The notes under the pieces: generated by a model | Databases searched by the model: none | The model's input: only the letters and a program-made list of their open reading frames with translations | Told to the model about the DNA's origin: nothing | Shown here: piece after piece, positions 21,201 to 59,185 of the stretch | How positions within the stretch are numbered: the stretch's first letter is position 1 | Layout: every line of letters begins with the position of its first letter | From: Octopus bimaculoides | Lineage: Eukaryota | Direction of reading: 5' to 3' | Assembly (NCBI RefSeq): GCF_001194135.2 | Contig: NC_068988.1 | Location: 72,823,104 to 72,887,103 of the forward strand | Length of the DNA stretch: 64,000 nt | Translations under genes and position numbers: made by a program

Positions 21201-22685
21201 CTCCGAGAGTGTAGTGGGTACTTTTTACATGCCACCAGCATGATGATGACACCTTCTCAAAGTCATATATATATGTACCATGCTTAAAGTACATATTATA
21301 GGAATTCAGTCTTCTTGGAGAATATAGAGAAAAGAATCAAATATATTAATAAAAATAAAATAGAAATATTGCCCAATTAACACAGCTCCTTGGATCCTGA
21401 GTGCCTTTATCAGAGACCACTGTTTTGCAAATATTTGATCAGATAACACATCTGAGGATAACTCAATATTTTGATGTATTGCTTTCTAATGTAGTGACCC
21501 TTGAGTCAGTGTTTCTTCCTCCCCTCTCTAATTCTAGTAGAGATTTAGCTATAAGAACAAGGTCATCAACGTAGAGGAGCTCCTAAAGGTTACCAGTCTT
21601 AAATTTGTCTACTACGGCCTGGAGGACTGATAAACATGAGGAGACTGAGGAGTGATCATTGGTGAACACTAAATTCATTGCTATACTCATTGCCAATTTT
21701 CACCTTATTGACAGCATCCCTGTACATGACTTGTACAGCTGTCACCAGCTTCTTCTCAATCCCTAGCTTCTGCACTGACCACCAGATAAGGGAGTAGACC
21801 CTGTCAAAGGCTTTCTCCATGTCAACGAAATCCAAGTAGGGGGGTTTATTTTTAGCTACATGCTTCTCCTGCAGTTGCCTTACTAGGAAGATAGCATCAA
21901 TAGTACTTCTCCCTGGCATAAAACCAAACTACATTTCGTCTAGGCTCTCTTTCAAATTAGTTAAGCTACGACCCTCTCTGTAACTTTCATGACCCAGTCC
22001 AGCAGTTTGATACCTCTGTAGTTATTTCTGTCTAAGGTGTCACCTTTGTAGCACTTGACTAAAATGCTGCTACACCAGTAGTTGGATGTAACTCCATTGT
22101 GGACAACTTGATTAACTATACGAGTAACTTGGTCACAAAATATATGGTAGCGTTTCAAATTAAAATAAAAAATAAGTCAAATAAAAACCTTCGAATTTTA
22201 TTTGTCATATGAGTGAGGCAATTATGCTTAAAATACTCACTTTATTACTAAGCTAGAAATAGCTGATGCAAATAATTATTAAAATATACTGTATACTTAC
22301 ATATTGGATAGCCAAGGGCAAAATCATTGCTACATGTAGTAAAAATACCAAAAATACCAGCATAACCAAAGTTGATTGGACGGTAGGTAATAAAAGTAAC
22401 TAATATGACCAAAGTGAAGATGATGAGTTTAGAGACTAAGACACACAAAATGAATTTGTAGTTAACTTCTTCCCAGTGGAGTTCCCACATTCCTTGCATG
22501 ACCATCGCTGGTAAGCAGAAATTCCATACAAAAATTCCAATGCTTTTTCCAGTTTTGAAAGTAATTATTTTTGTCCATCCAGCCCAATAACCAGCAAAGA
22601 TAACAGCAAAACATTGTACAATAGCAGGATATAAATTGTTTATGGAACAGTCTCCTGGGTTGGGTACAATTGTAGAGTTGTTCAT
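2693..22685 (-). CDS. GPR155: GPR155/LYCHOS orthologue (PIN-like transporter domain + GPCR-like domain), 10 coding exons in window, 3' part outside window
   Basis: Spliced translation MNNSTIVPNPGDCSINNLYPAIVQCFAVIFAGY...NDFALGYPI|LKALYG...YGTFPTAPSAFIYASQY...SAPLMFISARM...KKVPHLFT...QISKHIILLLCLLFSMCI follows the human GPR155 motif order (recalled: NDFALGYPI, TFPTAP, SAPIMYVSA, QLTRHVLL). All 10 exons have AG/GT ends and consistent phases; total 1995 nt. Confidence 0.93.
3122..4338 (-). mobile_element. 5'-truncated RTE-clade LINE with 15-bp target-site duplication
   Basis: RT peptides SYGIKQGCIFTPVLFNLFF, FRYLGITIS...IYKAVVVSTLFYGCQTW, LKAQLCWIGHVIRM; AGATCCCTAATTACT at 3107-3121 and 4339-4353. 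Confidence 0.85.
5690..6050 (+). repeat. Solo RTE 3' tail
   Basis: Same tail motif plus short repeated gtgtcatgtaaaa units. Confidence 0.75.
6595..6850 (-). CDS. GPR155: GPR155 coding exon 9
   Basis: tttttatag|ATT GTG ... ACA A|gtaagt; TM segment IVIKFVILLISITITSAALII then a polar loop; 256 nt. Confidence 0.88.
7127..7220 (-). CDS. GPR155: GPR155 coding exon 8
   Basis: gtgttag|G CTT CCA ... ATT CAG|gtatgc; GLPVFLTGILFLISWKYYSVSIDPTLQYGLIQ; 94 nt. Confidence 0.9.
7480..8750 (-). mobile_element. Degenerate Penelope-like element (RT thumb/linker region)
   Basis: Minus-strand peptide VFDIILKSFEIRTTYIKTDITNIYHYQPCPPFH (~8590-8700) resembles the PLE FLD...YRKPT...YLHxxSxHP motif; decayed hammerhead-like core at ~7494-7545. 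Confidence 0.5.
9112..9320 (-). CDS. GPR155: GPR155 coding exon 7
   Basis: ttattacag|ATA TTT ... TTT GG|gtaagt; IFRAIGLICC...SSNSWTCLLSI...FSLIGFG; 209 nt. Confidence 0.9.
9716..9799 (-). CDS. GPR155: GPR155 coding exon 6 (different frame from ORF-track 9699..9890)
   Basis: ttcgttaaag|GTT TGG ... TCA CAG|gtaatg; VWICVIFVITRRWKKVPHLFTLCLAISQ; 84 nt. Confidence 0.9.
10230..11130 (+). mobile_element. Mariner transposase relic
   Basis: Frameshifted peptides CLNCTQCHKWHQCFK, LLTDEQQENCV, GEKTWVY, WMLHNN, PKLKS in mariner order. Confidence 0.75.
11230..11385 (-). CDS. GPR155: GPR155 coding exon 5 (absent from ORF track)
   Basis: cctttacag|ACT GCA AGT ... TTT TGT|gtaagt; TASGLVLCTIFSAPLMFISARMMTF...TTFDISTLSLVFC; 156 nt. 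Confidence 0.92.
12650..13260 (-). mobile_element. CR1/L2-type LINE RT C-terminal fragment
   Basis: LFVNSNLHWTNHISKIIKKAEGVIASLNKTF. Confidence 0.55.
13625..13745 (-). mobile_element. SINE family B, 3' fragment
   Basis: taggcacaaggcc...caaccccaaaaagatgaaaggcaa. Confidence 0.6.
13863..14028 (-). CDS. GPR155: GPR155 coding exon 4
   Basis: ttttttcag|A CTA TTG ... ACT ATT|gtaagt; LLLPLVTW...FLYGTFPTAPSAFIYASQYSIATTI; 166 nt. Confidence 0.92.
14230..14690 (-). mobile_element. Degenerate LINE 3' fragment
   Basis: Weak similarity to the CR1/L2 C-terminal SFxPRTxxLWNSLP region. Confidence 0.35.
14930..15250 (-). mobile_element. tRNA-derived SINE family C
   Basis: Minus head GTGAAGGCTCATGGCTTAGTGGTTAGG...GGAATTCAATTCC; fragments also at ~12290-12570 and ~29900-30200. 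Confidence 0.7.
16275..16680 (-). mobile_element. Hammerhead-bearing AT-rich insertion (pLTR/retrozyme-like), truncated by an N-gap
   Basis: Very AT-rich, keeps CpGs, contains the 16551-16636 hammerhead; no ORF. Confidence 0.45.
16551..16636 (-). ncRNA. Minimal type-I hammerhead ribozyme motif with long stem II
   Basis: Minus strand: ATCT-CTGAAGA-GCGGA...TCCGC-GAAAC-GATC-GTA-AGAT. Stem I ATCT/AGAT, stem II GCGGA/TCCGC extended, palindromic GATC loop, GUA cleavage triplet. Confidence 0.8.
16685..17050 (+). mobile_element. tRNA-derived SINE family A
   Basis: gcttcccaaccacatggtttcgagttcagtcccac (B-box) and the family 3' tail. Confidence 0.8.
17269..17383 (-). CDS. GPR155: GPR155 coding exon 3
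   Basis: ttttccag|GT AAT GCA ... AAA AC|gtatgt; GNAFAASALFYLGLNLVGK...LVLAKT; 115 nt. Confidence 0.92.
17925..18450. mobile_element. Foldback/MITE-like element with nested inverted repeats
   Basis: Perfect 48-bp inverted repeat 17950-17997 / 18387-18434, inner hairpin ~18040-18130, (GA)n/(TC)n tracts, N-gap in the middle. Confidence 0.65.
18823..19110 (-). CDS. GPR155: GPR155 coding exon 2
   Basis: ttattgcag|TG AAA GCC ... TTA G|gtaagt; KALYGDNSIYLKYIYLFAPISLALINPICF...KNPIVFMTILG; 288 nt. Confidence 0.92.
19620..20140 (-). mobile_element. Degenerate RTE LINE RT fragment
   Basis: DWLVSVNQAMYK...VLVGFHIGPFLFVIV, homologous to 43260-43440. Confidence 0.7.
20670..20875 (+). repeat. Solo RTE 3' tail
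   Basis: Same tail motif, (GAT)n end. Confidence 0.75.
21035..21245 (-). repeat. Solo RTE 3' tail
   Basis: (CAT)n then the reverse tail; tail-to-tail with 20670-20875. Confidence 0.75.
21560..22150 (-). mobile_element. RTE LINE RT fragment
   Basis: PGRSTIDAIFLVRQLQEKH...DMEKAFDRV; NYRGIKLLDWVMKVTERV. Confidence 0.88.
22301..22685 (-). CDS. GPR155: GPR155 coding exon 1 (ATG at 22685)
   Basis: Minus strand ttttccag|cataATG (acceptor AG 22691-22690, so an upstream UTR exon is implied); ends ATA T|GTAAGT; 128 codons + 1 nt. Confidence 0.9.
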
Positions 22686-23254
22686 TATGCTGGAAAACAA
22701 GATATTGCAGCAATAAAAACATATCCAGATGACAACAATAGTATTTAAAATAATGAGCAGAAATAACAGTTCAACAAACAACAATAACATATACAACAAT
22801 GACAACAACAACATAAATAATAAATAGCAGGGAAAAACATATTTGATGAGCTCTAATTATAACTACTATTTGCATTATATCTCATAAATATTTATCAATA
22901 ATAACTGTAAACCGTGGCTTATAGATTGATCCAGTATACAAGTCAATCTTAAAGATTCTTAGGTGTTAGGCCCATACCTACTGTATTGATCAACTCTCAA
23001 ACAGATAATATGCTTACTGATGCTGTCCCAGAGACGTTCTCAGAGCTTCTCAAACTTTTTTAATTATCACCTCTTTTATTTCACTAACTTTTCCAATGCA
23101 CTCTTGCTACAATTCAATGCTCCCTTTCTCATTCTTAAGGTAATATCAGGCCAGAATAACTTAATTCCAGGTACAAGTTTGATGTGGCTGACTACTTACC
23201 ACAACAGGGTCCTACAATAAGTGAATATCTGATACATCAATGCTTAATCATTCA

Positions 23255-42039: not shown

Positions 42040-42610
42040 TGTTGCCATTTTATATTTTTAATTTCGTGCATGCACATTGTTTTTGATTTTGTTGACTACA
42101 CAGTATAGTACAGTCAGTTGGACACCATCTGTGAGAAAAACAGCACTCTGACACAATTCACTCTGCCAGAATTTTGGAAACGACATGTTATACTGCTTGG
42201 CATTCGTGCTGGAAGCTCCAATACAAACAAATGGTGAACCCATAGAACAACTGTTGGCTTGCCATGTCCTCAAAACATGTGCCAAGAGTGATAAAAATCA
42301 AACATCCAGTCAAAATCATGATGTTTGGAGTGATCACTAGTGAAGGTGCTATTATGCCTCCATTCAGCTTCCCACACGGCCTCAGACTCAACATGGAAAC
42401 CTATATCAAGTGCCTGAAGGAGGTAGTGCTGCCCTGGGTCAAGAGGGTGGCTGCTGGAAAACCCTATTTCTGGCAACAGGACTCTGCACCATGCCACACA
42501 AGCAGGAGAACCCAGTCATGGCTCTCAGACAATTTCTGTGATCACATCACCCCTAACATCTGGCCACCTAACTCCCCACACTGCAACCCTCTTAATTATT
42601 TCTTCAGATC
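42040..42610 (+). mobile_element. maT (DD37D-type) Tc1/mariner transposase fragment
   Basis: HPVKIMMFGVITSEG...WQQDSAPCHTS...WPPNSPHCNPLNY; 37 residues between the QQD aspartate and the PL(D>N)Y position. Confidence 0.8.
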
Positions 42611-43039
42611 TGCTACTACCTACCTACCACGCCTTCACAAAAACAAAAGAGAGAGAGACAGAAAAAAGGAAAATGTCCCACTTATTTGAAAACAATGAAA
42701 ATATTTTAAAAAAACATTTCATTTCATTTTTCCACAATTTAATCACTTTCATGTTTTATTCTAAGTTGAAAAAGTCGCAAAGACTGAAACCAGTACTAAA
42801 ATGTTCTTCACGATAAAATTATTTTAGCATTTTCTACCTTGTCCTATTTCCCTTATGTGTGTGTGTGTGTGACTCATATGAGGAGTCACAACGTGAAGTG
42901 GATGAATTGTAAACATTAGTGAATGGTAGTAATAGTAGTGTGGGTAGTGTGAGTATGTTATTGATTGTCTATTTGGTTGGATTTTTATTTTCCTGTCTTC
43001 TCACTAAACACTCATACATCATCTTCAATAGGAGAGTCT

Positions 43040-45002
43040 GTCATATAGTAAGGGAGAGAGTCAGTTCAGATGAGATGCAGTTTGGGTTTGTGCCAGGGAA
43101 AAGCACCACTGATGCTATATTTCTGGTAAGACAGCTGCAAGAGAAATACCTAGCCAAAGATAAACCTCTGTTCCTGGCTTTCGTTGACATGGAGAAAGCC
43201 TTTGACAGGGTCCCCCGATCCCTTATCTGGTGGTCAATGAGGAAACTAAGGGTAGATGAATGGTTAGTGAGAGCTGTGTGAGCCATGTACAGGGATGCTG
43301 TCAGTAAGTTGAAAGTTGGCAACAAGTATAGTGAAGAATTCAGTGTAGGGGTAGGGGTCCACCAAGGATCAGTCCTCAGCCCCCTCTTATTCATCATAGT
43401 CCTCCAGGCAATAACAGAAGAATTCAAGACAGGATGCCCCTGGGAGCTCCTCTATGCTGATGACCTTGCTCTAATTGCTGAGTCACTATCAGAACTAGAG
43501 GAAAAGTTTCAGGTGTGGAAGCAAGGATTAGAATCGAAGGGCCTTAGAGTCAACCTAACTAAAACCAAAGTTTTAATAAGTAGGAAGGCAGACAAACCAC
43601 AAATCCCTGATCAATCTGTAGAAAAGGCGTAGGTAGAAACGCCATAAAATGTACCCAGTGTAAGCTATGGACACAGGTGCAGCAATATCAAAGGAAGGCT
43701 AACTGGGAAGACAGTTTTTGTATGTGGCAAATGCTCAGGTTCTATAAACACTGAAAATGTGCAAAGAACAGCTTCTGTCACATTCCAGGGAGAAAAACTA
43801 GAAGTAGTTGATAGCTTCCATTACCTAGGGAACCAAGTTAGTAGCAGAGGTGGATGCTCTGAAAGGGTAACTGCTAGAATAAGAATAGCCTGGGGAAAGT
43901 TCAGAGAGCTACAACCTCTGCTAGTGACAAAGGGTCTCTTGCCCAGAGTAAAAGGTAGACTGTATGATGCATGTATATGAACAGCCATGCTACATGGCAG
44001 TGAAACATGGACTGTGACTGTTGAAGACATGCATAAGCTTGCAAGGAATGAAGCCAGTATGCTCCACTGGATGTGTAATGTCAGTGAGCATACATGACAG
44101 AGTGTAAGCGCCCCGGGAGAAAAGTTAGATTTAAGAAGCATCAGATGTGGTGTGCAAGAGAGACGACTGCGCTGATATGGTCATGTGTTGCGAATGAATG
44201 AGGACAGCTGTGTGAAAAATTGCCATACCCTAGCAGTTGAGGGAACCTGTGGAAGAGGTAGACCCAGGAAAACCTGGTATGAGGTGGTGAAGCATGACCT
44301 TTGAACATTGGGCCTTACTGAGGCAATGACTAGTGACCAAAACCTTTGGAGTTATGCTGTGCTTGAGAAGACCTGACAAGCCAAGTGAGACCATAGCCTG
44401 TGGCCTATGCCAGTGGGTGTAACCAGCCCATTTATGAATATCCCTCATTCATTAGACAATAAACTTTGCTTGCGAAGACCTATTGAGGCAAGTGAAATCA
44501 AAATCAAAATCGCTGTCATGGCCGATGACAGTACCGTCTGATTAGCACTCGTGCTAATGGAACATTAAAAGCACATCCGAGCGTGATCATTGCCAGGGCC
44601 ACGGATTGGCTCCCATGCCGGTGACACATGAAAAGCACCATTCAAGCATGATCATTGCCAGCATCGCCTTACTGGCACATGTGCCGGTGGCACGTGAAAA
44701 ACAACATTTGAGCATGGTCGTTGCCAGTGCCACCAGACTGGCTCCTGTGCAGGTAGCACATAAAAACATCTTTTGAGCATGGTCATTGCCAGAACCACCT
44801 GACTGGCCTTCGTGCCAGTGTCACGTAAAAGCACCCACTACACTCTTGGAGTGGTTGGCATTAGGAAGGGCATCCAGCTGTAGAAACTTTGCCGGATCAG
44901 ATTGAGCCTGGTGCAGCCTCTGGCTCACCAGTCCTCAGTCAAACCGTCCAACCCATGCCAGCATGGAAAGCAGACATTAAATGATGATGATGATGATGAT
45001 GA

Positions 45003-45470: not shown

Positions 45471-46729
45471 ACACACACACACACATATACAGACATATTC
45501 CAGTATTGGAATAAAAACAAAATGGCGTTAAATTATAATTCAATTTGTGCTACTCAATAACAAGTGGCACAGCTGCACAGTATCAGTTCATATTGATGCC
45601 CATAAAGACAGATAAATGATACTATATAAATGATACATAGAAATAGATTTTTTTTACCACCACCCATGAATGCAGACACACAAATACCTGAATGCACACT
45701 CACACACAAACACACACATGCTCTCTCTCTCTCTCTCTCTCTCTTTCTTTCTCTCTCTCTCTTTCTCTCTTTTTCTTTCTCTCTCCCTCTCTCTCTCTCT
45801 CTCTCTTTCCCTCTTCTCCTATACATTCCCACTCACATCCATACAACTTCATAAATATTGAACCTAAAACAAAAAGACAGATGTGAAGCTAAACCTGGAG
45901 TAGAGAAAGCATGTCACTGCAAGGTCATGAATAGTAATGAAAAGACTTTGGTAAACTGATGAACTAATTAACTAAATGATTAATCAAACAATGAATTATT
46001 TCCTTGATTAAGTAGCTAACCAATTGACAAATAAGTAAGAACTGAAATTGAACTATGTATCTTTTACTTTGAATCATAGCTCAATCTGTGATTATATCCT
46101 TTAATTCATTATTTTGAGCAATGGTTGGCAAGTTTGCTTTGGCAATGCTGAAGATATTTTGGTGACACGGATTGTGTGTCACTATAAATGGTATGACCTG
46201 TTCTTGTTTTCCTCATTTGTGTGTTGTCCTAAGTTGTTGTATAAGTATTTCTATAGCATACTGTATATCATTTTCTATAAGTAGAGACAGATGTTTTGTT
46301 TGAGCAGAAATTCTTAGAGTTCTGTCAGGGGTTTGTCTCTGGTATTCACATCTTCCACGAAGGTACAAATTTTTCTGGCTAGGCAGTATGAGATATTGTG
46401 TTTGTATGTGTTGGATGGCAGAATTTAAAATTCAGGTATTGATGCACACCTGTGTGTTTATAGTATATATCAGTGATGATGGTGGTGTCACTTTTAATTA
46501 CCATTAATTACTATTTTAATTACCATTTTAACTACCAGAAACAGTTGTTGGATTTATAACACCTTTCATTCACTCCTCTAATTTTCTGTCATTTGTACTC
46601 TGTGTACGTTGGTCCTATTAATATAAATATCTATATATTTATGTTTAAAAATTCATCATCTGCAAGTTTCCACCTTCTGCTTTCTCTTGTTTTGCATGTA
46701 TATTTATATACATATTTTGTATTCTTTTA

Positions 46730-47080
46730 TTCTTTTAGTCTTTCACTTGTTTCAGTCATTTGACTGAGGCCATACTGGAGCATCGCCTTAAAGTGTTTTA
46801 GTTGAAGAAATCGACCCCAGGACTTATTCTTTATAAGCTTATGTGCCAAATTCAGTTGTCAAGCGATGGTGGGTGGACAAACACACACACACATAAATAT
46901 ATACAGATATATACATATCACAGGATTCTTTCAGTTTCCTTCTGCCAAATCCTTTCACAAGGCTTTGGTCAGCCCGAGGTTATAGTAGAAGATACTTGGC
47001 CAAGGTGCCACACAGTGGGACTGAACCTGGAACCATGTGTTTGGGAAGCAAGCTTCTTACCATACAATCATACCTGCACC
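46730..47080 (-). mobile_element. SINE family A
   Basis: Both halves in reverse. Confidence 0.8.
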
Positions 47081-51230: not shown

Positions 51231-51609
51231 ATCATTCCATTAAATGTGTTTATAGGGAGAAAAAGTTTGAAAAACATCAATACATACCAGAGTGACAAAG
51301 AAATATATATATATACAGATGCATAACTATATATAACTATTTAAATAGTTTCTTTTCTACAATCTAGCTCCCTTAAAATTTTCTCTAATCTAAGCAGTGT
51401 GGTATAGCTTTAATAAGAATAGGATAGTGTTAAATTCCTCCTGCTCTGTAGAATCTTAGGTGATCAAATACGGGATTGATTACGGCATTATGAAATTTTG
51501 AAATGCCAATGCAAAACTCATGTAAACAAATGAAAGAATGTATAATTCTCTGTTCTTTGTGCTTATATATAAATAAAGGTCATCACTCCCATCTCTAGCC
51601 ATACGTAAT

Positions 51610-51656
51610 ACACACGGACTCGAGTTTCTTGGTGGTTACCCGTCCTCAGCATGTGT
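51610..51656 (-). ncRNA. Minimal type-I hammerhead ribozyme motif (left palindrome arm)
   Basis: Minus strand: ACACATG-CTGAGGA-CGGGTAACCACCAA-GAAAC-TCGA-GTC-CGTGTGT; 7-bp stem I with one G-U, TCGA loop, GUC triplet; stem II imperfect. Confidence 0.72.
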
Positions 51657-52167
51657 TAATCACCAGCTAGTGATGAAAACTCACCCCACTCGCAAAATAC
51701 TGTATGCTTTTTCCAGTGACAGTTCGTCGCTGATCTCGAAAAAGGAGAAATAAGCTATATTAAATCTCTGAGCGAGATGTAAACAATAGCAATACGGAAT
51801 CGTAACATATAATTGCCAACCAAGTGTGGCGTTCTATATGGGACAGTGCTACTGGCGTTTATAACCCCAGGAAGACATCTCTTTCAGCTGCTTCCCTCAC
51901 AAATACTAATCAGACACAGAATGTTTGTCGTTAGCCAGATAGAAAAGATGTCTGCCTGGGGCTATAAACGCCAGTAGCAGTCTCATATAGGACGCCACAC
52001 TTGGTTGGCAATTATATGTTGCGATTCCGTATTGCTACTGTTTACATCTCGCTCAGAGATTTAATATAGCTTATTTCTCCTTTTTTAAGATCAGCGACGA
52101 ACTGTCACTGGAAAAAGCATACAGTATTTTGTGAGTGAGGTGAGTTTTCATCACTAGCTGATGATTA

Positions 52168-52214
52168 ACACATGCTGAGGACGGGTAACCACCCAGAAAC
52201 TTGAGTCCATGTGT
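52168..52214 (+). ncRNA. Minimal type-I hammerhead ribozyme motif (right palindrome arm)
   Basis: ACACATG-CTGAGGA-C GGGT aacc ACCC A-GAAAC-TTGA-GTC-CATGTGT; perfect 7-bp stem I, GUC triplet; C.A mismatch at the base of stem II; loop TTGA vs TCGA in the other arm. Confidence 0.72.
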
Positions 52215-52372
52215 ATCACATAAAGCTAGGGATGTGAGTGTTGACCTCCCCACACAAATACTAATCGGACACAGAATGTGTGTCGTTAGCCAGCCTGGAA
52301 AAGATGTCTTCCTGGGGCTATAAACGCCAGTAGCACTGTCCTGTATAGGACGCCACACTTGGTTGGCAATTC

Positions 52373-52407
<35 letters not shown>

Positions 52408-53067
52408 GTATGTAAGATCCAGGGATCAAGGTGTAGGAAGAAAGTTAGCTTCAAGCAATCTGTAGTAAATATCAAAAAACAACTTTCAGGGACAACAGTG
52501 GTTTATTTAGATGGAAGGTTGTGGATTTTTTCGTATCAAAGAACGATAAGCTGAAAAAGTTCTTTTTATATTCCACAGTAGGCGACCAGGGTTGCCAGGT
52601 GTGTGAATAAGAATTACAGAATGGAGATATCCTTGGCCTGAAGAGTAGCTGGCAGTATACACCTCATTTGGATTTTACCACTTCTGAAGTTCCACTCGCT
52701 ATAAAACATATGTAGCCCGGATCTTTCCAACTCCATTCCATAACTCTTATGTACACACACATACATATATACACCTTCCTGCAACTTAAGGGTACACCTG
52801 GACATTCTTCACCAGCTCTCTCTTCTACTTTTCCAACTGGGGTTAGTATCGACTAACCTCCTTCCATACTCCTAAAAATTGCTAGCCTTGTGCCTAAATT
52901 ACAAACTATTATTTTACCCTGCATACATAGTAGGCAGCTACTGCAAATTAATGTAAGAAGCATAGAAACGATTGAAGGACCAACGTTACTTGAGATGGGA
53001 AGGTGGGTAGGAAACGTCATTAAGCGAGAACGTATCGAGAAAATACGAGACATTAGCATTGCTATCG

Positions 53068-53082: not shown

Positions 53083-54420
53083 ATGGCGACGTATCGTGAT
53101 ATTGATAAGGTGAAATACCTTTGTGATTGTGGCAAGAAGCATCCAATTTGTTGGCTTTATCTATGTCGACATTGTTTTAAGCTCCGATGTGGTGACTGTC
53201 TTCTACATGAAGTGGATTCCCACTTTTGTCCTTGTTGTCTTGAAAATCTACCTTCAACAGAAGCTAAGCTTCGTAAAAATCGATGTGGGAGTTGTTTTGA
53301 TTGCCCCAGCTGTGGACATCTCTTGTCTACTCGAGCTACAAACACTTTTATTGTCAACCCAGAGGATCCGACGAAAAACATCCCGAAAAAGATGTACTAT
53401 TTAGCTTGTGGATTTTGTCGTTGGACTACCAGAGATATTGGTATTGGTGACAAACCTGTTGCTACGGGAGGTTGGCAAGATCTGGAAAGCCCGCATCTTG
53501 ATAGAGTTACTATGCTTTTAGAATACTATAAAAAGCTTTCACTGAAAGAGAACTCTGAAAAAGAACGTGAGAAATTTATTAAGAGGCGTGGTCATATTTA
53601 TTATACCGATAAATTTAGTTTGGCGACCGTAGCTCTGAAACGCAAAGCATTAAACAGTCCTTCGGCAGCCTTACACGATGATGACACCACAATTCTAGAG
53701 ATAGAACCTGCCGAAACAGTCACTGAATTCCCCGAACTTGACGATGAAATATTTGCTACTCCGATTCAGCTGAACAAAATTACTACTATCGACCAAAGAC
53801 TATCATCACCAGAATTCCAACCAGTACAGGTGAATAATATGTATCCTAGACACAAGCATTTACAAGTGAGGAAGTCTGTCAGATGTAAGAAATGTGATCA
53901 TAATCTCATCAAACCTGACTACAACTCTGCTTCGACCAAATTTAAAATTCAATCAACTGCCATGTATCATGTACCAGAGCTTCGAATCTCTAACTATAAT
54001 GTATTTTCTCCAAAGAAAGAGAAAAAAATTAGCCTGACCTTATCAAACCCTGCTATTTACAATATGGATATTGAATTTAGTCTTGTCCAAGGCGAAGATC
54101 TGTATTCAACTGCCAAAGTGGAGCTGCCTAAAAAGAAGATTGTTTTGGCACGACGTGATGAAGATGCATTATACGAAGGTAGCAGTTCTCTTGAGAATGT
54201 GTTCGATGATGATCCAGCAGTTATTGTGTCTCGCAAGCTGAACAAAATTATCTTTGTTATTGGTGTTACACCTGTAATTTCTGAAGGTGAGGTAAGGGTT
54301 GCATTTGTTATGCGCCATACTTATAAAAACGTTACTCTCGGTCTCCCGAGCGAAAAAGAAGAGGTGCAAACAGTTTGGTTAGATCATACAATTTATGCTC
54401 AACTTGGACAAATCCAGTAA
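53083..54420 (+). CDS. DCTN4: Dynactin subunit 4 (p62), single-exon 445-aa ORF, probable retrogene
   Basis: Uninterrupted ORF with p62 motifs HEVDSHFCPCCLEN, KNRCGSCFDCPSC, KKMYYLACGFCRWT, YPRHKHL, RCKKCDHNLIKP, DDDPAVIVSRKLNK. AATAAA directly after the stop. The upstream TTG at 53059 is not the likely start. Confidence 0.95.
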   Translation: MATYRDIDKVKYLCDCGKKHPICWLYLCRHCFKLRCGDCLLHEVDSHFCPCCLENLPSTEAKLRKNRCGSCFDCPSCGHLLSTRATNTFIVNPEDPTKNIPKKMYYLACGFCRWTTRDIGIGDKPVATGGWQDLESPHLDRVTMLLEYYKKLSLKENSEKEREKFIKRRGHIYYTDKFSLATVALKRKALNSPSAALHDDDTTILEIEPAETVTEFPELDDEIFATPIQLNKITTIDQRLSSPEFQPVQVNNMYPRHKHLQVRKSVRCKKCDHNLIKPDYNSASTKFKIQSTAMYHVPELRISNYNVFSPKKEKKISLTLSNPAIYNMDIEFSLVQGEDLYSTAKVELPKKKIVLARRDEDALYEGSSSLENVFDDDPAVIVSRKLNKIIFVIGVTPVISEGEVRVAFVMRHTYKNVTLGLPSEKEEVQTVWLDHTIYAQLGQIQ

Positions 54421-57969: not shown

Positions 57970-59185
57970 TGGTACTGTGAAAGTGTAGCTGCTGGAATAA
58001 GAATAGCCCGGGCAAAGTTCAGAGAGCTCCTACCTCTGCTGGTGACAAAGGGCCTCTTGCTCAGGTAAAAGGTAGACTGTATGACACACGTGTACAAACA
58101 GCCATGCTACATGGCAGTGAAACATGGGCCGTGACTGCTGAGGACATGCGTAAGCTTGCAAGGAATGAAACCAGTATGCTCCGCTGGATGAGTAATGTCA
58201 GTGTGCATACACAACAGAGTGAAAAGTTGGACCTAAGAAGCATTAGTTGTGGTATGCAAGAGAGATGGTTGCTCTGGTATGGTCATGTGGCGAGAATGGA
58301 TGAGGATAACTGTGTGAAAAAGTGTTACACCCTTGCTGTTGAGGGAAACTGTGGAAGAGGTAGACCCAGGAAGACTTGGAATGAGGTGGTGAAGCACGAC
58401 TTTCAAACATTAGGCCTCACCAAGGCAATGACTAGTGACCGAGACCTTTGGAAATATGCTGTGCTTGAGAAGACCCGGCAAGCTAAGTGAGACTATAACC
58501 CATGGCCTATGCCAGGGGTGTAACCAGCCCACTTATTCGTACCTTTCCTTCATTGGACACTAACTGCTTGCGAAGACCTGTTGAGGCAAGTGAAATCGAA
58601 AACAAAATCAAATTTGATGACAGCACCGCATGACTGGCATCTGTGCTAGTGGAGCGCTAAGAGCACCATCTGAGCGTGATTGTTGCCTGGGCCACTGACT
58701 GGCTCCCGTGCTGGTCGCACGTAAAAAGCACCATTCGAGCATGATTGTTACCAGCGTCGCCTTACTGGCATGTGAAAAACAATATTCAAGCGAGGTCATT
58801 GCCNNNNNNNNNNNNNNNNNNNNNNNNNNNNNNNNNNNNNNNNNNNNNNNNNNNNNNNNNNNNNNNNNNNNNNNNNNNNNNNNNNNNNNNNNNNNNNNNN
58901 NNNATTGCCAGTGCCGCTGGACTGGCTCCTGTGCAGGTGGCACGTAAAAAACACCATTTGGACATGGCCATTGCCAGTACTGCCTGACTGGCCCTCATGC
59001 CGGTGGCATTTAAAAGCACCCACTACACTCTCGGAGTGGTTAGCATTAGGAAGGGCATCCAGCTGTAGAAACTCTACCAGATCAGATTGGAGCCTGGTGC
59101 AGCCATCTGGCTCACCAGTCCTCAGTCAAATCGTCCAACCCATGCCAGCATGGAAAGTGAACGTTAAACGATGATGATGATGATG
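57970..59185 (+). mobile_element. RTE-clade LINE 3' end, same family as 43040-45005
   Basis: LHGSETWAVTAEDM...WYGHVARM...GRGRPRKTW; same 3'UTR and GAT tail; one N-gap. Confidence 0.9.

What the first reader, a model, noticed from the sequence alone, without database searches (positions are those of the whole stretch)
51578..52371. ~670-bp palindrome carrying a hammerhead on each strand, just upstream of the DCTN4 retrogene
Seen: ~305-bp inverted arms around a ~55-bp spacer, then a direct ~125-bp restart of the monomer (period ~355 bp). Hammerheads lie at 51610-51656 (-) and 52168-52214 (+), so a transcript from either strand passes one sense ribozyme near the end of a long hairpin. Established: inverted-plus-partial-tandem terminal repeats with hammerheads typify Penelope-like elements, and retrozyme monomers are a few hundred nt. 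Inference: it could terminate or insulate read-through toward DCTN4, make dsRNA (ADAR/siRNA substrate), or mark the event that delivered the retrogene. The arms differ by multiple substitutions, several at CpG, so this is not an assembly mirror.
Basis: partly seen in the sequence, partly recalled or inferred. Interest (0 to 1): 0.8.

Follow-up and report, generated by a model that had tools for sequence, protein, structure and literature searches.

The report
Decayed Penelope-type hammerhead repeat insertion
This is an old, non-coding retrotransposon relic of the hammerhead-carrying Penelope/retrozyme kind, inserted in the head-to-head plus partial-tandem layout typical of those elements about 700 bp upstream of an intronless dynactin-4 gene; nothing found ties it to that gene.

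Summary
Window 51577-52377 contains three pieces of one 356-bp non-coding unit. They are an inverted, 5'-truncated copy (51577-51890), a full direct copy (51891-52246), and the first 131 bp of a second direct copy (52247-52377). The pieces differ pairwise by 8.0-8.5%, with 6 of 25 arm substitutions at CpG. This fits one old insertion, not an assembly mirror.

Each strand carries a type-I hammerhead motif with a complete catalytic core, a 7-bp helix I and a palindromic helix III. Both motifs are weak. Rfam Hammerhead_1 gives 18 bits against a gathering score of 34. A C·A mismatch closes helix II, and the minus-strand copy has a second helix II defect.

The inverted-plus-partial-tandem layout, the ribozyme just upstream of the insertion ends, and the (TA)n target match published Penelope-like element insertions. 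Unit size and GC match molluscan non-LTR retrozymes.

There is no ORF and only one sense ribozyme per strand, so the locus cannot release monomers or circles. Any read-through transcript would bury the ribozyme in a ~310-bp hairpin.

I found no evidence linking it to DCTN4. Family members and orthologous loci could not be retrieved. Verdict: ordinary transposon relic, a new member of a known kind.

The parts
51564..51574 (.). Candidate left target-site duplication TATATATAAAT, separated from the element by AA
   Evidence: Read directly from the sequence. The same 11-mer recurs at 52397-52407. The context is low-complexity, so this is a candidate only.
51577..51890 (-). Inverted copy of the 356-bp unit. 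It is 5'-truncated (lacks unit positions 1-45). Its 3' end (...GTGATGACCT) forms the left edge of the insertion.
   Evidence: 312 aligned columns with 8.0% mismatch to the direct copy. nhmmer E=1e-120.
51610..51656 (-). Hammerhead motif of the inverted copy: ACACAUG-CUGAGGA-CGGGUAACCACCAA-GAAAC-UCGA-GUC|CGUGUGU. The predicted cut lies between 51617 and 51616. Helix II is reduced to 3 bp.
   Evidence: Core found. RF00163 scores 18.0 bits over model 1-45, E 0.028 on an 83-nt search. The motif fails my helix II criterion.
51891..51935 (+). Palindrome 'spacer'. It is unit positions 1-45 (CTTCCCTCACAAATAC...), present in both direct copies and absent from the inverted copy. It contains an AC-rich hairpin (GACACA/TGTGTC, best preserved at 52268-52285).
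   Evidence: Three-way alignment. It forms the central loop of the predicted fold.
51891..52246 (+). Full-length direct unit (356 bp, GC 42%, no ORF)
   Evidence: All six reading frames are broken by stops except one antisense stretch, and that stretch has no protein relatives.
52168..52214 (+). Hammerhead motif of the direct unit: ACACAUG-CUGAGGA-C-GGGU-AACC-ACCC-A-GAAAC-UUGA-GUC|CAUGUGU. The predicted cut is after C52207, 40 nt upstream of the unit end.
   Evidence: Core found. My descriptor gives helix I 7 bp and helix II 4 bp. RF00163 scores 17.8 bits, E 0.032.
52247..52377 (+). Second direct unit restarting at position 1 and ending at position 131. It forms the right edge of the insertion, as a one-sided extension.
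   Evidence: 8.5% mismatch to the full unit and 8.1% to the inverted copy.
52378..52407 (.). (TA)n microsatellite abutting the right edge, with the candidate right target-site duplication TATATATAAAT at 52397-52407
   Evidence: TRF reports period 2, 16 copies, 52373-52404. Sequence read.
53083..54420 (+). Neighbour, not part of the element: intronless dynactin subunit 4 (p62) coding sequence, 705 bp downstream
   Evidence: ORF. Pfam PF05502. Full-length matches to molluscan DCTN4. The Haliotis orthologue spans 18-23 kb.

Best explanation
A single, old retrotransposition event placed a short (356-bp), non-coding, hammerhead-bearing unit into a (TA)n microsatellite of a mollusc genome (probably a cephalopod). 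The unit is either a pLTR-derived non-autonomous partner of Penelope-like elements or, in the other nomenclature, a non-LTR retrozyme.

Inferred mechanism, by analogy to the anole PLE studied in vitro: the PLE RT/GIY-YIG protein nicked both strands of the AT-rich target and primed cDNA synthesis from both. Each cDNA started at an internal site a short distance downstream of the hammerhead on a more-than-unit-length RNA. One cDNA gave the direct 1.37-unit copy, whose right end lies 170 nt past the cut site. The other gave the inverted 5'-truncated copy, whose left end lies 40 nt past the cut site.

The three pieces have since decayed neutrally by about 4% each, including CpG loss inside the ribozyme. 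In the element's life cycle the hammerhead serves to process multimeric element RNA. At this locus there is only one sense ribozyme per strand, with a weakened helix II, so no unit-length or circular RNA can be released. The copy is a dead relic with no demonstrated role for the neighbouring DCTN4 gene.

Shown: the repeat anatomy, the divergence, the motif, the lack of an ORF, and the target context. Inferred: both-strand priming, the RT start sites, the identity of the mobilising enzyme, and inactivity.
For: Anatomy: an inverted 5'-truncated unit, a full unit and a partial tandem unit. Pairwise mismatches are equal at 8.0/8.1/8.5%, a star-like pattern expected from one event.

Unit boundaries: the outer end of the inverted copy (51577 = 52247) and the start of the full unit (51891 = 52246) fall on the same unit boundary. 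The unit therefore has defined termini.

Non-coding status: the element has no ORF, and the one open antisense stretch has no protein relatives.

Hammerhead:
- All core nucleotides are present.
- Helix I is 7 bp, helix II 4 bp and helix III 2 bp, with a palindromic tetraloop (ACUCGAGU).
- A match this good is found in only 1.3% of simulated windows.
- RF00163 is the top Rfam hit on the correct strand for both copies.

Target: (TA)16 at the right edge, TA-rich sequence at the left, and a shared 11-mer.

Literature match:
- PLE insertions are 5'-truncated partial tandems, often with an adjacent inverted 5'-truncated copy. They carry hammerheads in the pLTRs and prefer microsatellite targets, (TA)n for the Naiad clade, with (TA)n drawn as a preferred target in that paper's figure 1 (PMC8557442).
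- Paired hammerheads 100-700 bp apart on opposite strands were already reported (PMC4209133).
- The purified anole PLE protein cleaves and extends both strands of AT-rich DNA. It starts reverse transcription internally, ~85-92 nt downstream of the hammerhead cut (PMC11167929).
- Mussel retrozyme units are 350-390 bp, and retrozymes generally have GC <45% (PMC7229834). This unit is 356 bp with GC 42-44%.
- Invertebrate retrozyme hammerheads have a 2-bp helix III capped by a tetraloop. An active axolotl family has a mismatch at the base of helix II.
- Retrozymes are reported to derive from PLE pLTRs (bioRxiv 10.64898/2026.07.22.740005).
- Octopus genomes carry active Penelope families (PMC13282606).
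Against: - No second copy of the unit was found in the window, in the fetched loci, or in the metagenome, prokaryote-genome and viral collections. Repetitiveness in the genome, a family consensus, a link to an autonomous PLE, and covariation in the ribozyme are all undemonstrated.
- The hammerhead scores half of Rfam's gathering threshold.
- The motif lacks the G10.1-C11.1 pair that Cervera & de la Pena list as highly conserved. A C·A pair closes helix II in both copies.
- The isolated motifs do not fold significantly better than shuffles (z -1.9 and -0.8).
- The one-sided extension is 131 bp, not the 30-40 bp 'tail' described for PLEs.
- The candidate target duplication lies in low-complexity DNA and could be chance.
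- The host is identified only as a mollusc by protein similarity.
Confidence: 0.78

Rival explanations
1. The element is a remnant of an autonomous Penelope-like element rather than a dedicated non-autonomous unit. On this reading it consists of solo or stacked pLTRs left after extreme 5' truncation or internal deletion of an ORF-bearing copy.
For: PLE copies are heavily 5'-truncated, and most genomic PLE hammerheads occur as isolated motifs from truncated elements. Retrozymes and pLTRs are sequence relatives, so the two are hard to separate from a single locus.
Against: The tandem period is 356 bp, with a clean unit-end to unit-start junction at 52246/52247. The template therefore already repeated at 356 bp, not at the ~3-4 kb of an ORF-bearing unit. 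No RT or GIY-YIG coding remnant lies inside or next to the element.
Confidence: 0.15
2. The repeat is some other kind of element or a local duplication-inversion, and the hammerhead resemblance is fortuitous or long dead. The ribozyme label would then say nothing about its origin.
For: The Rfam score is only 18 bits against a gathering score of 34. There was no hit when 1.1 kb or the whole window was searched. A C·A pair closes helix II. The two motifs are copies of one ancestor, so they count as a single observation. MFE folding is not significant.
Against: The complete 13-nt core, three correctly placed helices and a palindromic helix III are found in only 1.3% of simulated windows. The motif also sits where PLE and retrozyme biology predicts, a few tens of nt upstream of the insertion ends, inside an inverted/tandem architecture at a (TA)n target.
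Confidence: 0.07
3. The element is a foldback or MITE-like DNA transposon with ~310-bp terminal inverted repeats, inserted at a TA site.
For: There is a near-perfect long palindrome with a short loop, TA-rich flanks on both sides, and no coding capacity.
Against: The structure is not symmetric. The 'loop' and the 131 bp beyond the right arm are parts of the same unit repeated in direct order. The right end of the palindrome (52247) is therefore an internal unit junction, not an element terminus. A foldback model does not predict the partial tandem or the hammerhead.
Confidence: 0.03
4. The palindrome has been co-opted. It might be a hairpin-RNA source (ADAR substrate or endo-siRNA precursor), or a terminator/insulator protecting the DCTN4 promoter. 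Alternatively it might mark the event that delivered the DCTN4 retrocopy.
For: It lies 705 bp upstream of the DCTN4 start codon. Its predicted hairpin is -553 kcal/mol. Inverted repeats are the main ADAR substrates in animals, and octopus shows very high hyper-editing (PMC5625713). PLE reverse transcriptases can retrotranspose host genes in trans (PMC8557442).
Against: - There are no expression data.
- The three pieces diverge equally and at a neutral-looking rate, with CpG decay inside the ribozyme.
- The element has its own candidate target duplication, and ~700 bp of unrelated sequence separate it from the gene.
- The intronless gene is shared with relatives far more diverged than the element's copies are from each other.
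- The related transcript or contig L001 begins about 325 bp downstream of the element's right edge and does not include the element.
Confidence: 0.04
5. The palindrome is an assembly artefact (mirror join) in a gap-rich short-read assembly.
For: The window has nine N gaps and many microsatellites. Craig et al. note that PLE inverted/tandem structures confuse short-read assemblies.
Against: The arms differ at 25 substitutions plus indels, with a transition and CpG bias typical of real decay. The nearest gaps are more than 3.5 kb away.
Confidence: 0.01

Closest known systems
Penelope-like element (PLE) insertions with pseudo-LTRs and hammerhead motifs (Evgen'ev & Arkhipova; Cervera & de la Pena 2014, PMC4209133; Craig et al. 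2021, PMC8557442; Frangieh et al. 2024, PMC11167929)
   Same: Partial tandem plus an adjacent inverted 5'-truncated copy. A hammerhead lies in the repeat just upstream of the insertion ends. The target is AT-rich/(TA)n. There is an extension at one end only. Helix III is short and palindromic, which implies dimeric action. Pairs of motifs on opposite strands a few hundred bp apart have been reported.
   Different: There is no RT/GIY-YIG ORF, and the unit is only 356 bp. The one-sided extension is 131 bp rather than 30-40 bp. The hammerhead looks more like the canonical metazoan type I (helix I 7 bp, helix II 4 bp, helix III 2 bp plus tetraloop) than the PLE 'minimal' form (helix II 6-8 bp, no helix III). 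A C·A pair replaces G10.1-C11.1. Sequence homology to any catalogued PLE could not be tested.
Metazoan non-LTR retrozymes (Cervera & de la Pena 2020, PMC7229834; Li, Clavereau & Pollet 2026 preprint, 10.64898/2026.07.22.740005)
   Same: A non-coding unit of a few hundred bp (mussel units are 350-390 bp) with low GC. A type-I hammerhead with a 2-bp helix III capped by a tetraloop. A moderately self-paired monomer (67% paired, z=-2.4). Co-existence with PLEs in molluscs. Dispersed monomer and dimer derivatives are described as non-mobile offspring.
   Different: Retrozymes are defined by head-to-tail arrays in which every unit has a sense hammerhead, so that monomers are excised and circularised. 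Here there are only 1.37 direct units with one sense ribozyme, plus an inverted copy. CircRNA expression and self-cleavage are untested. The loop 1-loop 2 tertiary contacts of canonical motifs could not be assessed.
Hammerhead-bearing satellite/SINE-like repeats (newt satellite 2, Schistosoma Sm-alpha; as summarised in PMC4209133 and PMC7229834)
   Same: A ~330-bp unit carrying a type-I hammerhead whose weak, palindromic helix III requires two copies for efficient cleavage.
   Different: Those repeats occur in long tandem arrays or as high-copy dispersed SINE-like elements. Copy number here is unknown, and only one locus was seen.
Palindromic or inverted-repeat transposon copies that form edited dsRNA (for example the frog Harbinger palindrome and inverted repeat pairs; PMC5625713)
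   Same: A long, nearly perfect intramolecular duplex would form if the locus were transcribed.
   Different: Here the palindrome is a by-product of the insertion mechanism of a retroelement. No editing or expression evidence is available.

Membership tests
Hammerhead ribozyme, type I (Rfam RF00163) | Conserved catalytic core: C3-U4-G5-A6-N7-G8-A9, G12-A13-A14, A15.1-U16.1, H17 | tested here: met
   CUGAGGA ... GAAA-C ... GUC is present in both copies, on the strand that is sense for each copy.
Hammerhead ribozyme, type I (Rfam RF00163) | Three helices in the right places (open helix I, capped helix II, capped helix III) | tested here: met
   In the + copy, helix I is 7 bp, helix II is 4 bp (GGGU/ACCC, loop AACC) and helix III is AC/GU with a UUGA loop. 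In the minus copy, helix I is 7 bp (one G·U) and helix III has a UCGA loop, but helix II is reduced to 3 bp by a C-to-A change, so it fails the descriptor.
Hammerhead ribozyme, type I (Rfam RF00163) | Watson-Crick pair (usually G10.1-C11.1) closing helix II next to the core | tested here: not met
   Both copies have C opposite A at this position (CUGAGGA-C...A-GAAA). An active axolotl retrozyme family tolerates a U·U mismatch here (PMC7229834), so this weakens the motif but does not exclude activity.
Hammerhead ribozyme, type I (Rfam RF00163) | Score at or above Rfam's gathering threshold (34 bits) | tested here: not met
   Scores are 17.8 and 18.0 bits with a full-length model alignment. The hits appear only when 83-nt stretches are searched.
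Hammerhead ribozyme, type I (Rfam RF00163) | Site-specific self-cleavage | not testable with these tools
   This needs in vitro transcription of monomer and dimer constructs.
Penelope-like element (autonomous) | Single ORF encoding a telomerase-like RT plus a GIY-YIG endonuclease | tested here: not met
   No ORF lies within 51577-52377 other than a 134-aa antisense stretch with no relatives. The RT fragments elsewhere in the window are RVT_1/LINE-like and lie 6-9 kb away.
Penelope-like element insertion architecture (autonomous or non-autonomous) | Partial tandem (pseudo-LTR) organisation | tested here: met
   1.37 direct units with a unit-end/unit-start junction at 52246/52247.
Penelope-like element insertion architecture (autonomous or non-autonomous) | Inverted 5'-truncated copy directly adjacent at the 5' side | tested here: met
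   51577-51890 is the reverse complement of unit positions 46-356 and abuts the direct copy with no intervening DNA. This is the feature described in PMC8557442.
Penelope-like element insertion architecture (autonomous or non-autonomous) | Hammerhead motif in the terminal repeat, with insertion ends (RT start sites) shortly downstream of it | tested here: met
   The ends lie 40 nt (left copy) and 170 nt (right copy) downstream of the predicted cut sites. In the anole PLE the corresponding distance is ~85-92 nt.
Penelope-like element insertion architecture (autonomous or non-autonomous) | AT-rich / microsatellite target | tested here: met
   (TA)16 at the right edge, TA-rich sequence at the left edge, and a shared TATATATAAAT.
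Penelope-like element insertion architecture (autonomous or non-autonomous) | 30-40-bp 'tail' present at one end only | tested here: inconclusive
   A one-sided extension exists (52247-52377), but it is 131 bp long and is a restart of the unit.
Penelope-like element insertion architecture (autonomous or non-autonomous) | Sequence relationship to the pLTR of an autonomous PLE in the same genome | not testable with these tools
   No eukaryotic genome or repeat library is available. Pattern scans of the metagenome, prokaryote and viral collections found nothing usable.
Metazoan non-LTR retrozyme | Non-coding unit of ~150-450 bp with GC <45% | tested here: met
   The unit is 356 bp. GC is 0.42 for the full unit and 0.44 for the inverted copy.
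Metazoan non-LTR retrozyme | Head-to-tail array with a sense hammerhead in each of two or more units, so that a unit-length RNA is excised | tested here: not met
   The second direct unit stops at position 131, before its hammerhead (unit position ~278-324). There is only one sense motif per strand.
Metazoan non-LTR retrozyme | Highly self-paired monomer RNA | tested here: inconclusive
   The circular fold of the cut-to-cut monomer is -94.3 kcal/mol with 67% paired and z=-2.4 (2 of 200 shuffles as stable).
Metazoan non-LTR retrozyme | Expression as linear and circular unit-length RNA | not testable with these tools
   No transcriptome data can be mapped here.

The most novel reading that the evidence does not exclude
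The palindrome is not inert. It is transcribed from upstream of DCTN4 as a ~310-bp hairpin RNA and has been retained as a source of edited dsRNA or endo-siRNAs against its own hammerhead-element family, or as a boundary for the DCTN4 promoter. A more modest version: its junctions are a natural in vivo record of the both-strand priming and internal RT initiation so far shown only in vitro for one lizard PLE.
Probability: 0.04. Interest if true: 0.55.

Novelty: new member of a known kind. Interest (0 to 1): 0.2.

Why it matters
The finding matters little on its own. It is a correctly spotted but ordinary transposon relic.

Its modest value is as a clean, fully resolved single-locus example in a mollusc of the Penelope-type inverted-plus-tandem insertion geometry built from a 356-bp non-coding hammerhead unit. 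Both insertion ends fall shortly downstream of the ribozyme, and one end coincides with the unit boundary. [quoted passage not shown]

If the family is abundant in this genome, it would be worth cataloguing for repeat annotation and for interpreting dsRNA and editing signals near genes.

Tried and rejected
Rfam searches:
- At gathering over the whole window there were no hits.
- At E<=10 over 51400-52500 there was no hammerhead, only chance miRNA/snoRNA hits on the (TA)n tract.
- Hammerhead_1 appeared only on 83-nt stretches, and sub-threshold.

Attempts to find family members:
- An exact-pattern scan with the 26-mer ribozyme core found 0 metagenome hits.
- A conserved 21-mer found one metagenome contig, L006, sharing only 25-30 nt. 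I treated this as chance. The same 21-mer found 0 hits in the prokaryote-genome and viral collections.
- A protein search with the only open frame of the repeat found nothing.
- nhmmer with a three-copy profile found nothing else in the window or in the fetched loci.

Comparative test of co-occurrence with DCTN4:
- Contigs encoding the 95% (L001/L002) and 77% (L003-L005) orthologues were fetched.
- L001/L002 reach only to about window 52700, and their similarity to the window starts at 52781.
- L003-L005 share no alignable non-coding DNA with the window.
- None of these contigs carries a hammerhead-like motif.
- The test is therefore uninformative. The window's own protein is not on record.

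Other rejected readings:
- tRNA-derived SINE: no tRNA-like gene was found.
- Tandem-repeat finder reports only the (TA)n tract.
- Retrocopy hallmarks for DCTN4: I looked for a poly(A) remnant downstream and found none.
- Assembly mirror, foldback/MITE, and co-delivery with the retrogene were each considered and rejected, as set out under the rival explanations.
Full report
**1. What is in the sequence**

Window 51577-52377 (801 bp) is built from three pieces of one 356-bp unit.
- Self-BLAST aligns 51577-52247 with its own reverse complement (675 columns, 88.6% identity).
- It aligns 51891-52019 with 52246-52377 (89.4%).
- The repeat finder gives the same arms and a direct spacing of 355-358 bp.

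A three-way alignment resolves the layout:
- 51577-51890 is an inverted copy of unit positions 46-356.
- 51891-52246 is a complete unit in direct orientation.
- 52247-52377 is a restart of the unit, positions 1-131.

The 45-bp 'spacer' of the palindrome is simply unit positions 1-45, which the inverted copy lacks. The outer end of the inverted copy (51577, equivalent to 52247) and the first base of the full unit (51891, equivalent to 52246) fall on the same boundary. That boundary is ...GTTGACCT | C(T/C)CCC(T/A)CACAAATAC.... The unit therefore has defined termini.

No other copy exists in the 64-kb window.

**2. Age and authenticity**

The three pieces differ pairwise by 8.0%, 8.1% and 8.5%. 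Between the arms there are 19 transitions and 6 transversions, and 6 of the changes are of CpG type. Equal, star-like divergence fits one insertion event followed by neutral decay of about 4% per piece. It rules out an assembly mirror, and the nearest N gaps are more than 3.5 kb away.

If the host is an octopus, a published calibration (JC 0.09 for about 25 My, PMC13282606) would put the event at roughly 10 My. This rests on an unproven host assignment.

**3. The hammerheads**

Both copies carry CUGAGGA...GAAAC...GUC on the strand that is sense for that copy.

The + copy reads ACACAUG / CUGAGGA / C-GGGU-AACC-ACCC-A / GAAAC-UUGA-GUC | CAUGUGU.
- Helix I is 7 bp.
- Helix II is 4 bp and is closed by a C·A juxtaposition.
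- Helix III is 2 bp with a tetraloop.
- The predicted cut is after C52207.

The minus copy retains CpGs that the + copy has lost: ACUCGAGUC | CGUGUGU. This gives a perfectly palindromic ACUCGAGU, the feature that lets such ribozymes act as dimers (PMC4209133). It has also lost a helix II pair (ACCC to ACCA).

Statistical support is modest:
- My descriptor (core plus three helices) matches the + copy. It matches in only 1.3% of simulated windows of the same length and first-order composition as the ungapped ~61 kb.
- Rfam finds nothing at gathering or at E<=10 over 1.1 kb.
- On 83-nt stretches RF00163 Hammerhead_1 is the top hit on the right strand. It aligns full-length at 17.8 and 18.0 bits, half the 34-bit gathering score.
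- The isolated motifs do not fold better than shuffles.
- The two motifs descend from one ancestor, so they count as one observation.
- Within the 47-nt motif the copies differ at 3 positions, about the same rate as the rest of the unit. There is no sign of constraint since insertion.

**4. What kind of element**

The unit has no coding capacity. All frames are broken except one antisense stretch, and that stretch has no relatives among 5.8 billion proteins. It is not tRNA-derived.

The architecture matches what Craig et al. describe for Penelope-like elements (PMC8557442):
- strong 5' truncation;
- partial tandems forming pseudo-LTRs;
- hammerheads in the repeats;
- an extension at one end only;
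- a bias for microsatellite targets such as (TA)n.

Here the right edge abuts (TA)16. The left edge is TA-rich, and both flanks share TATATATAAAT (51564-51574 and 52397-52407), a candidate target duplication in low-complexity DNA.

Cervera & de la Pena had already noted pairs of such motifs 100-700 bp apart on opposite strands.

The unit's size (356 bp), its GC (42-44%) and its 2-bp helix III capped by a tetraloop match molluscan and other invertebrate non-LTR retrozymes. Mussel units are 350-390 bp (PMC7229834). [quoted passage not shown]

Because the tandem period is 356 bp, the template RNA itself repeated at that length. I therefore favour a non-autonomous unit over a truncated ORF-bearing PLE.

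**5. Likely mechanism (inferred)**

The purified anole PLE protein cleaves and extends both strands of AT-rich DNA. It starts reverse transcription at internal sites ~85-92 nt downstream of the hammerhead cut, near an AC-rich stem-loop. The interval between its two start sites is the 'tail' (PMC11167929).

In this locus the two insertion ends lie 40 nt (left, inverted copy) and 170 nt (right, direct copy) downstream of the respective cut sites. An AC-rich hairpin sits at unit positions ~23-40. Priming from both nicked strands on a more-than-unit-length RNA would give exactly an inverted copy facing a direct copy. The different start sites would explain the one-sided 131-bp extension.

This is an analogy, not a demonstration. 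The extension is also longer than the canonical 30-40 bp tail.

**6. Consequences at this locus**

- Each strand has only one sense ribozyme. Neither a unit-length RNA nor a circle can be excised, and the dimeric ribozyme cannot form in cis.
- A transcript through the region is predicted to fold into a ~310-bp hairpin (-553 kcal/mol, z=-43). That hairpin pairs the sense ribozyme with its antisense copy.
- The copy is best seen as a dead-end relic.
- If transcribed, it would be a generic ADAR/dsRNA substrate like any inverted repeat (PMC5625713). No data bear on that.

**7. Relation to DCTN4**

The ORF at 53083-54420 is a full-length dynactin p62 (Pfam PF05502), with 100% coverage of molluscan orthologues. 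It sits in one uninterrupted exon, whereas the Haliotis gene spans 18-23 kb. 'Intronless, probably a retrocopy' is therefore reasonable, although no poly(A) remnant survives.

The best named relatives are a chiton, abalone and bivalves at 50-57% identity. Unnamed Logan contigs give 95% and 77%. The host is therefore a mollusc outside those classes, probably a cephalopod; this is an inference.

The element lies 705 bp upstream of the gene, separated from it by unrelated sequence. Its pieces are only ~8% apart. The gene is shared with species whose coding DNA is 72% (L003-L005) and ~87-89% (L001/L002) identical to the window, and the one short alignable non-coding stretch upstream of L001's ORF is 73% identical. 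The element therefore looks younger than the gene and independent of it.

The direct test, presence or absence at the orthologous site, could not be done. The related contigs stop at about window 52700, about 325 bp short of the element, or share no alignable non-coding DNA.

**8. Verdict**

- The classification as a Penelope-type/retrozyme-type hammerhead repeat is supported by anatomy and literature. Genome-wide family data are lacking.
- The functional speculations are unsupported.
- This is a new member of a known kind, of low general interest.

Noticed in passing
window, whole: The loose pattern CTGANGA-N6-30-GAAA occurs 18 times against 5.1 expected from dinucleotide shuffles (maximum 11). 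Only the site at 52175(+) passes a test that also requires helices I-III. The excess is unexplained and may reflect A-rich composition or other repeats.
   Followed up: partly
window 53083-54420 (+): A full-length dynactin subunit 4 coding sequence sits in a single exon, whereas the abalone orthologue spans 18-23 kb. No poly(A) remnant or flanking duplication was seen downstream, so any retrocopy origin is old. Whether an intron-containing parent gene still exists in this genome is unknown.
   Followed up: partly
window 42264-42689 (+) and 42919-43281 (+): A Tc1/mariner-like DDE_3 transposase fragment lies next to an RVT_1 (LINE-type) reverse-transcriptase fragment. Together they form a nest of degraded transposons about 9 kb upstream of the hammerhead element.
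   Followed up: no
window 58104-58490 (+): A 128-aa ORF resembles the C-terminal part of LINE reverse transcriptases but has no Pfam hit. It is probably another decayed non-LTR element.
   Followed up: no
window 22248-22814 (-): An ORF matches the Pfam Mem_trans domain (PF03547, membrane transport protein). It is probably an exon of a host gene on the minus strand.
   Followed up: no
window 16195-58903 (nine N runs): There are nine assembly gaps of 52-764 bp, several of them (where the flanks were read) bordered by (TA)n or (CA)n microsatellites. This points to a short-read draft assembly of a microsatellite-rich, ~35% GC genome.
   Followed up: no
L001/L002 positions 1-78; window 46724-46789 (-): Two independent Logan contigs of the 95%-identical DCTN4 orthologue start at the same base. 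Upstream of about window 52781 they lose similarity to the window, and their first ~67 nt weakly match a different place in the window on the other strand. This suggests that a different repeat occupies the upstream region in that species.
   Followed up: no
L006 640-669 (metagenome contig Ga0007796_10027435): A 25-nt exact (30 nt at 93%) match to the unit's GCCACACTTGGTTGGCAAT segment lies in an otherwise unrelated 2-kb metagenome contig. I treated it as a chance hit of the 21-mer scan.
   Followed up: partly
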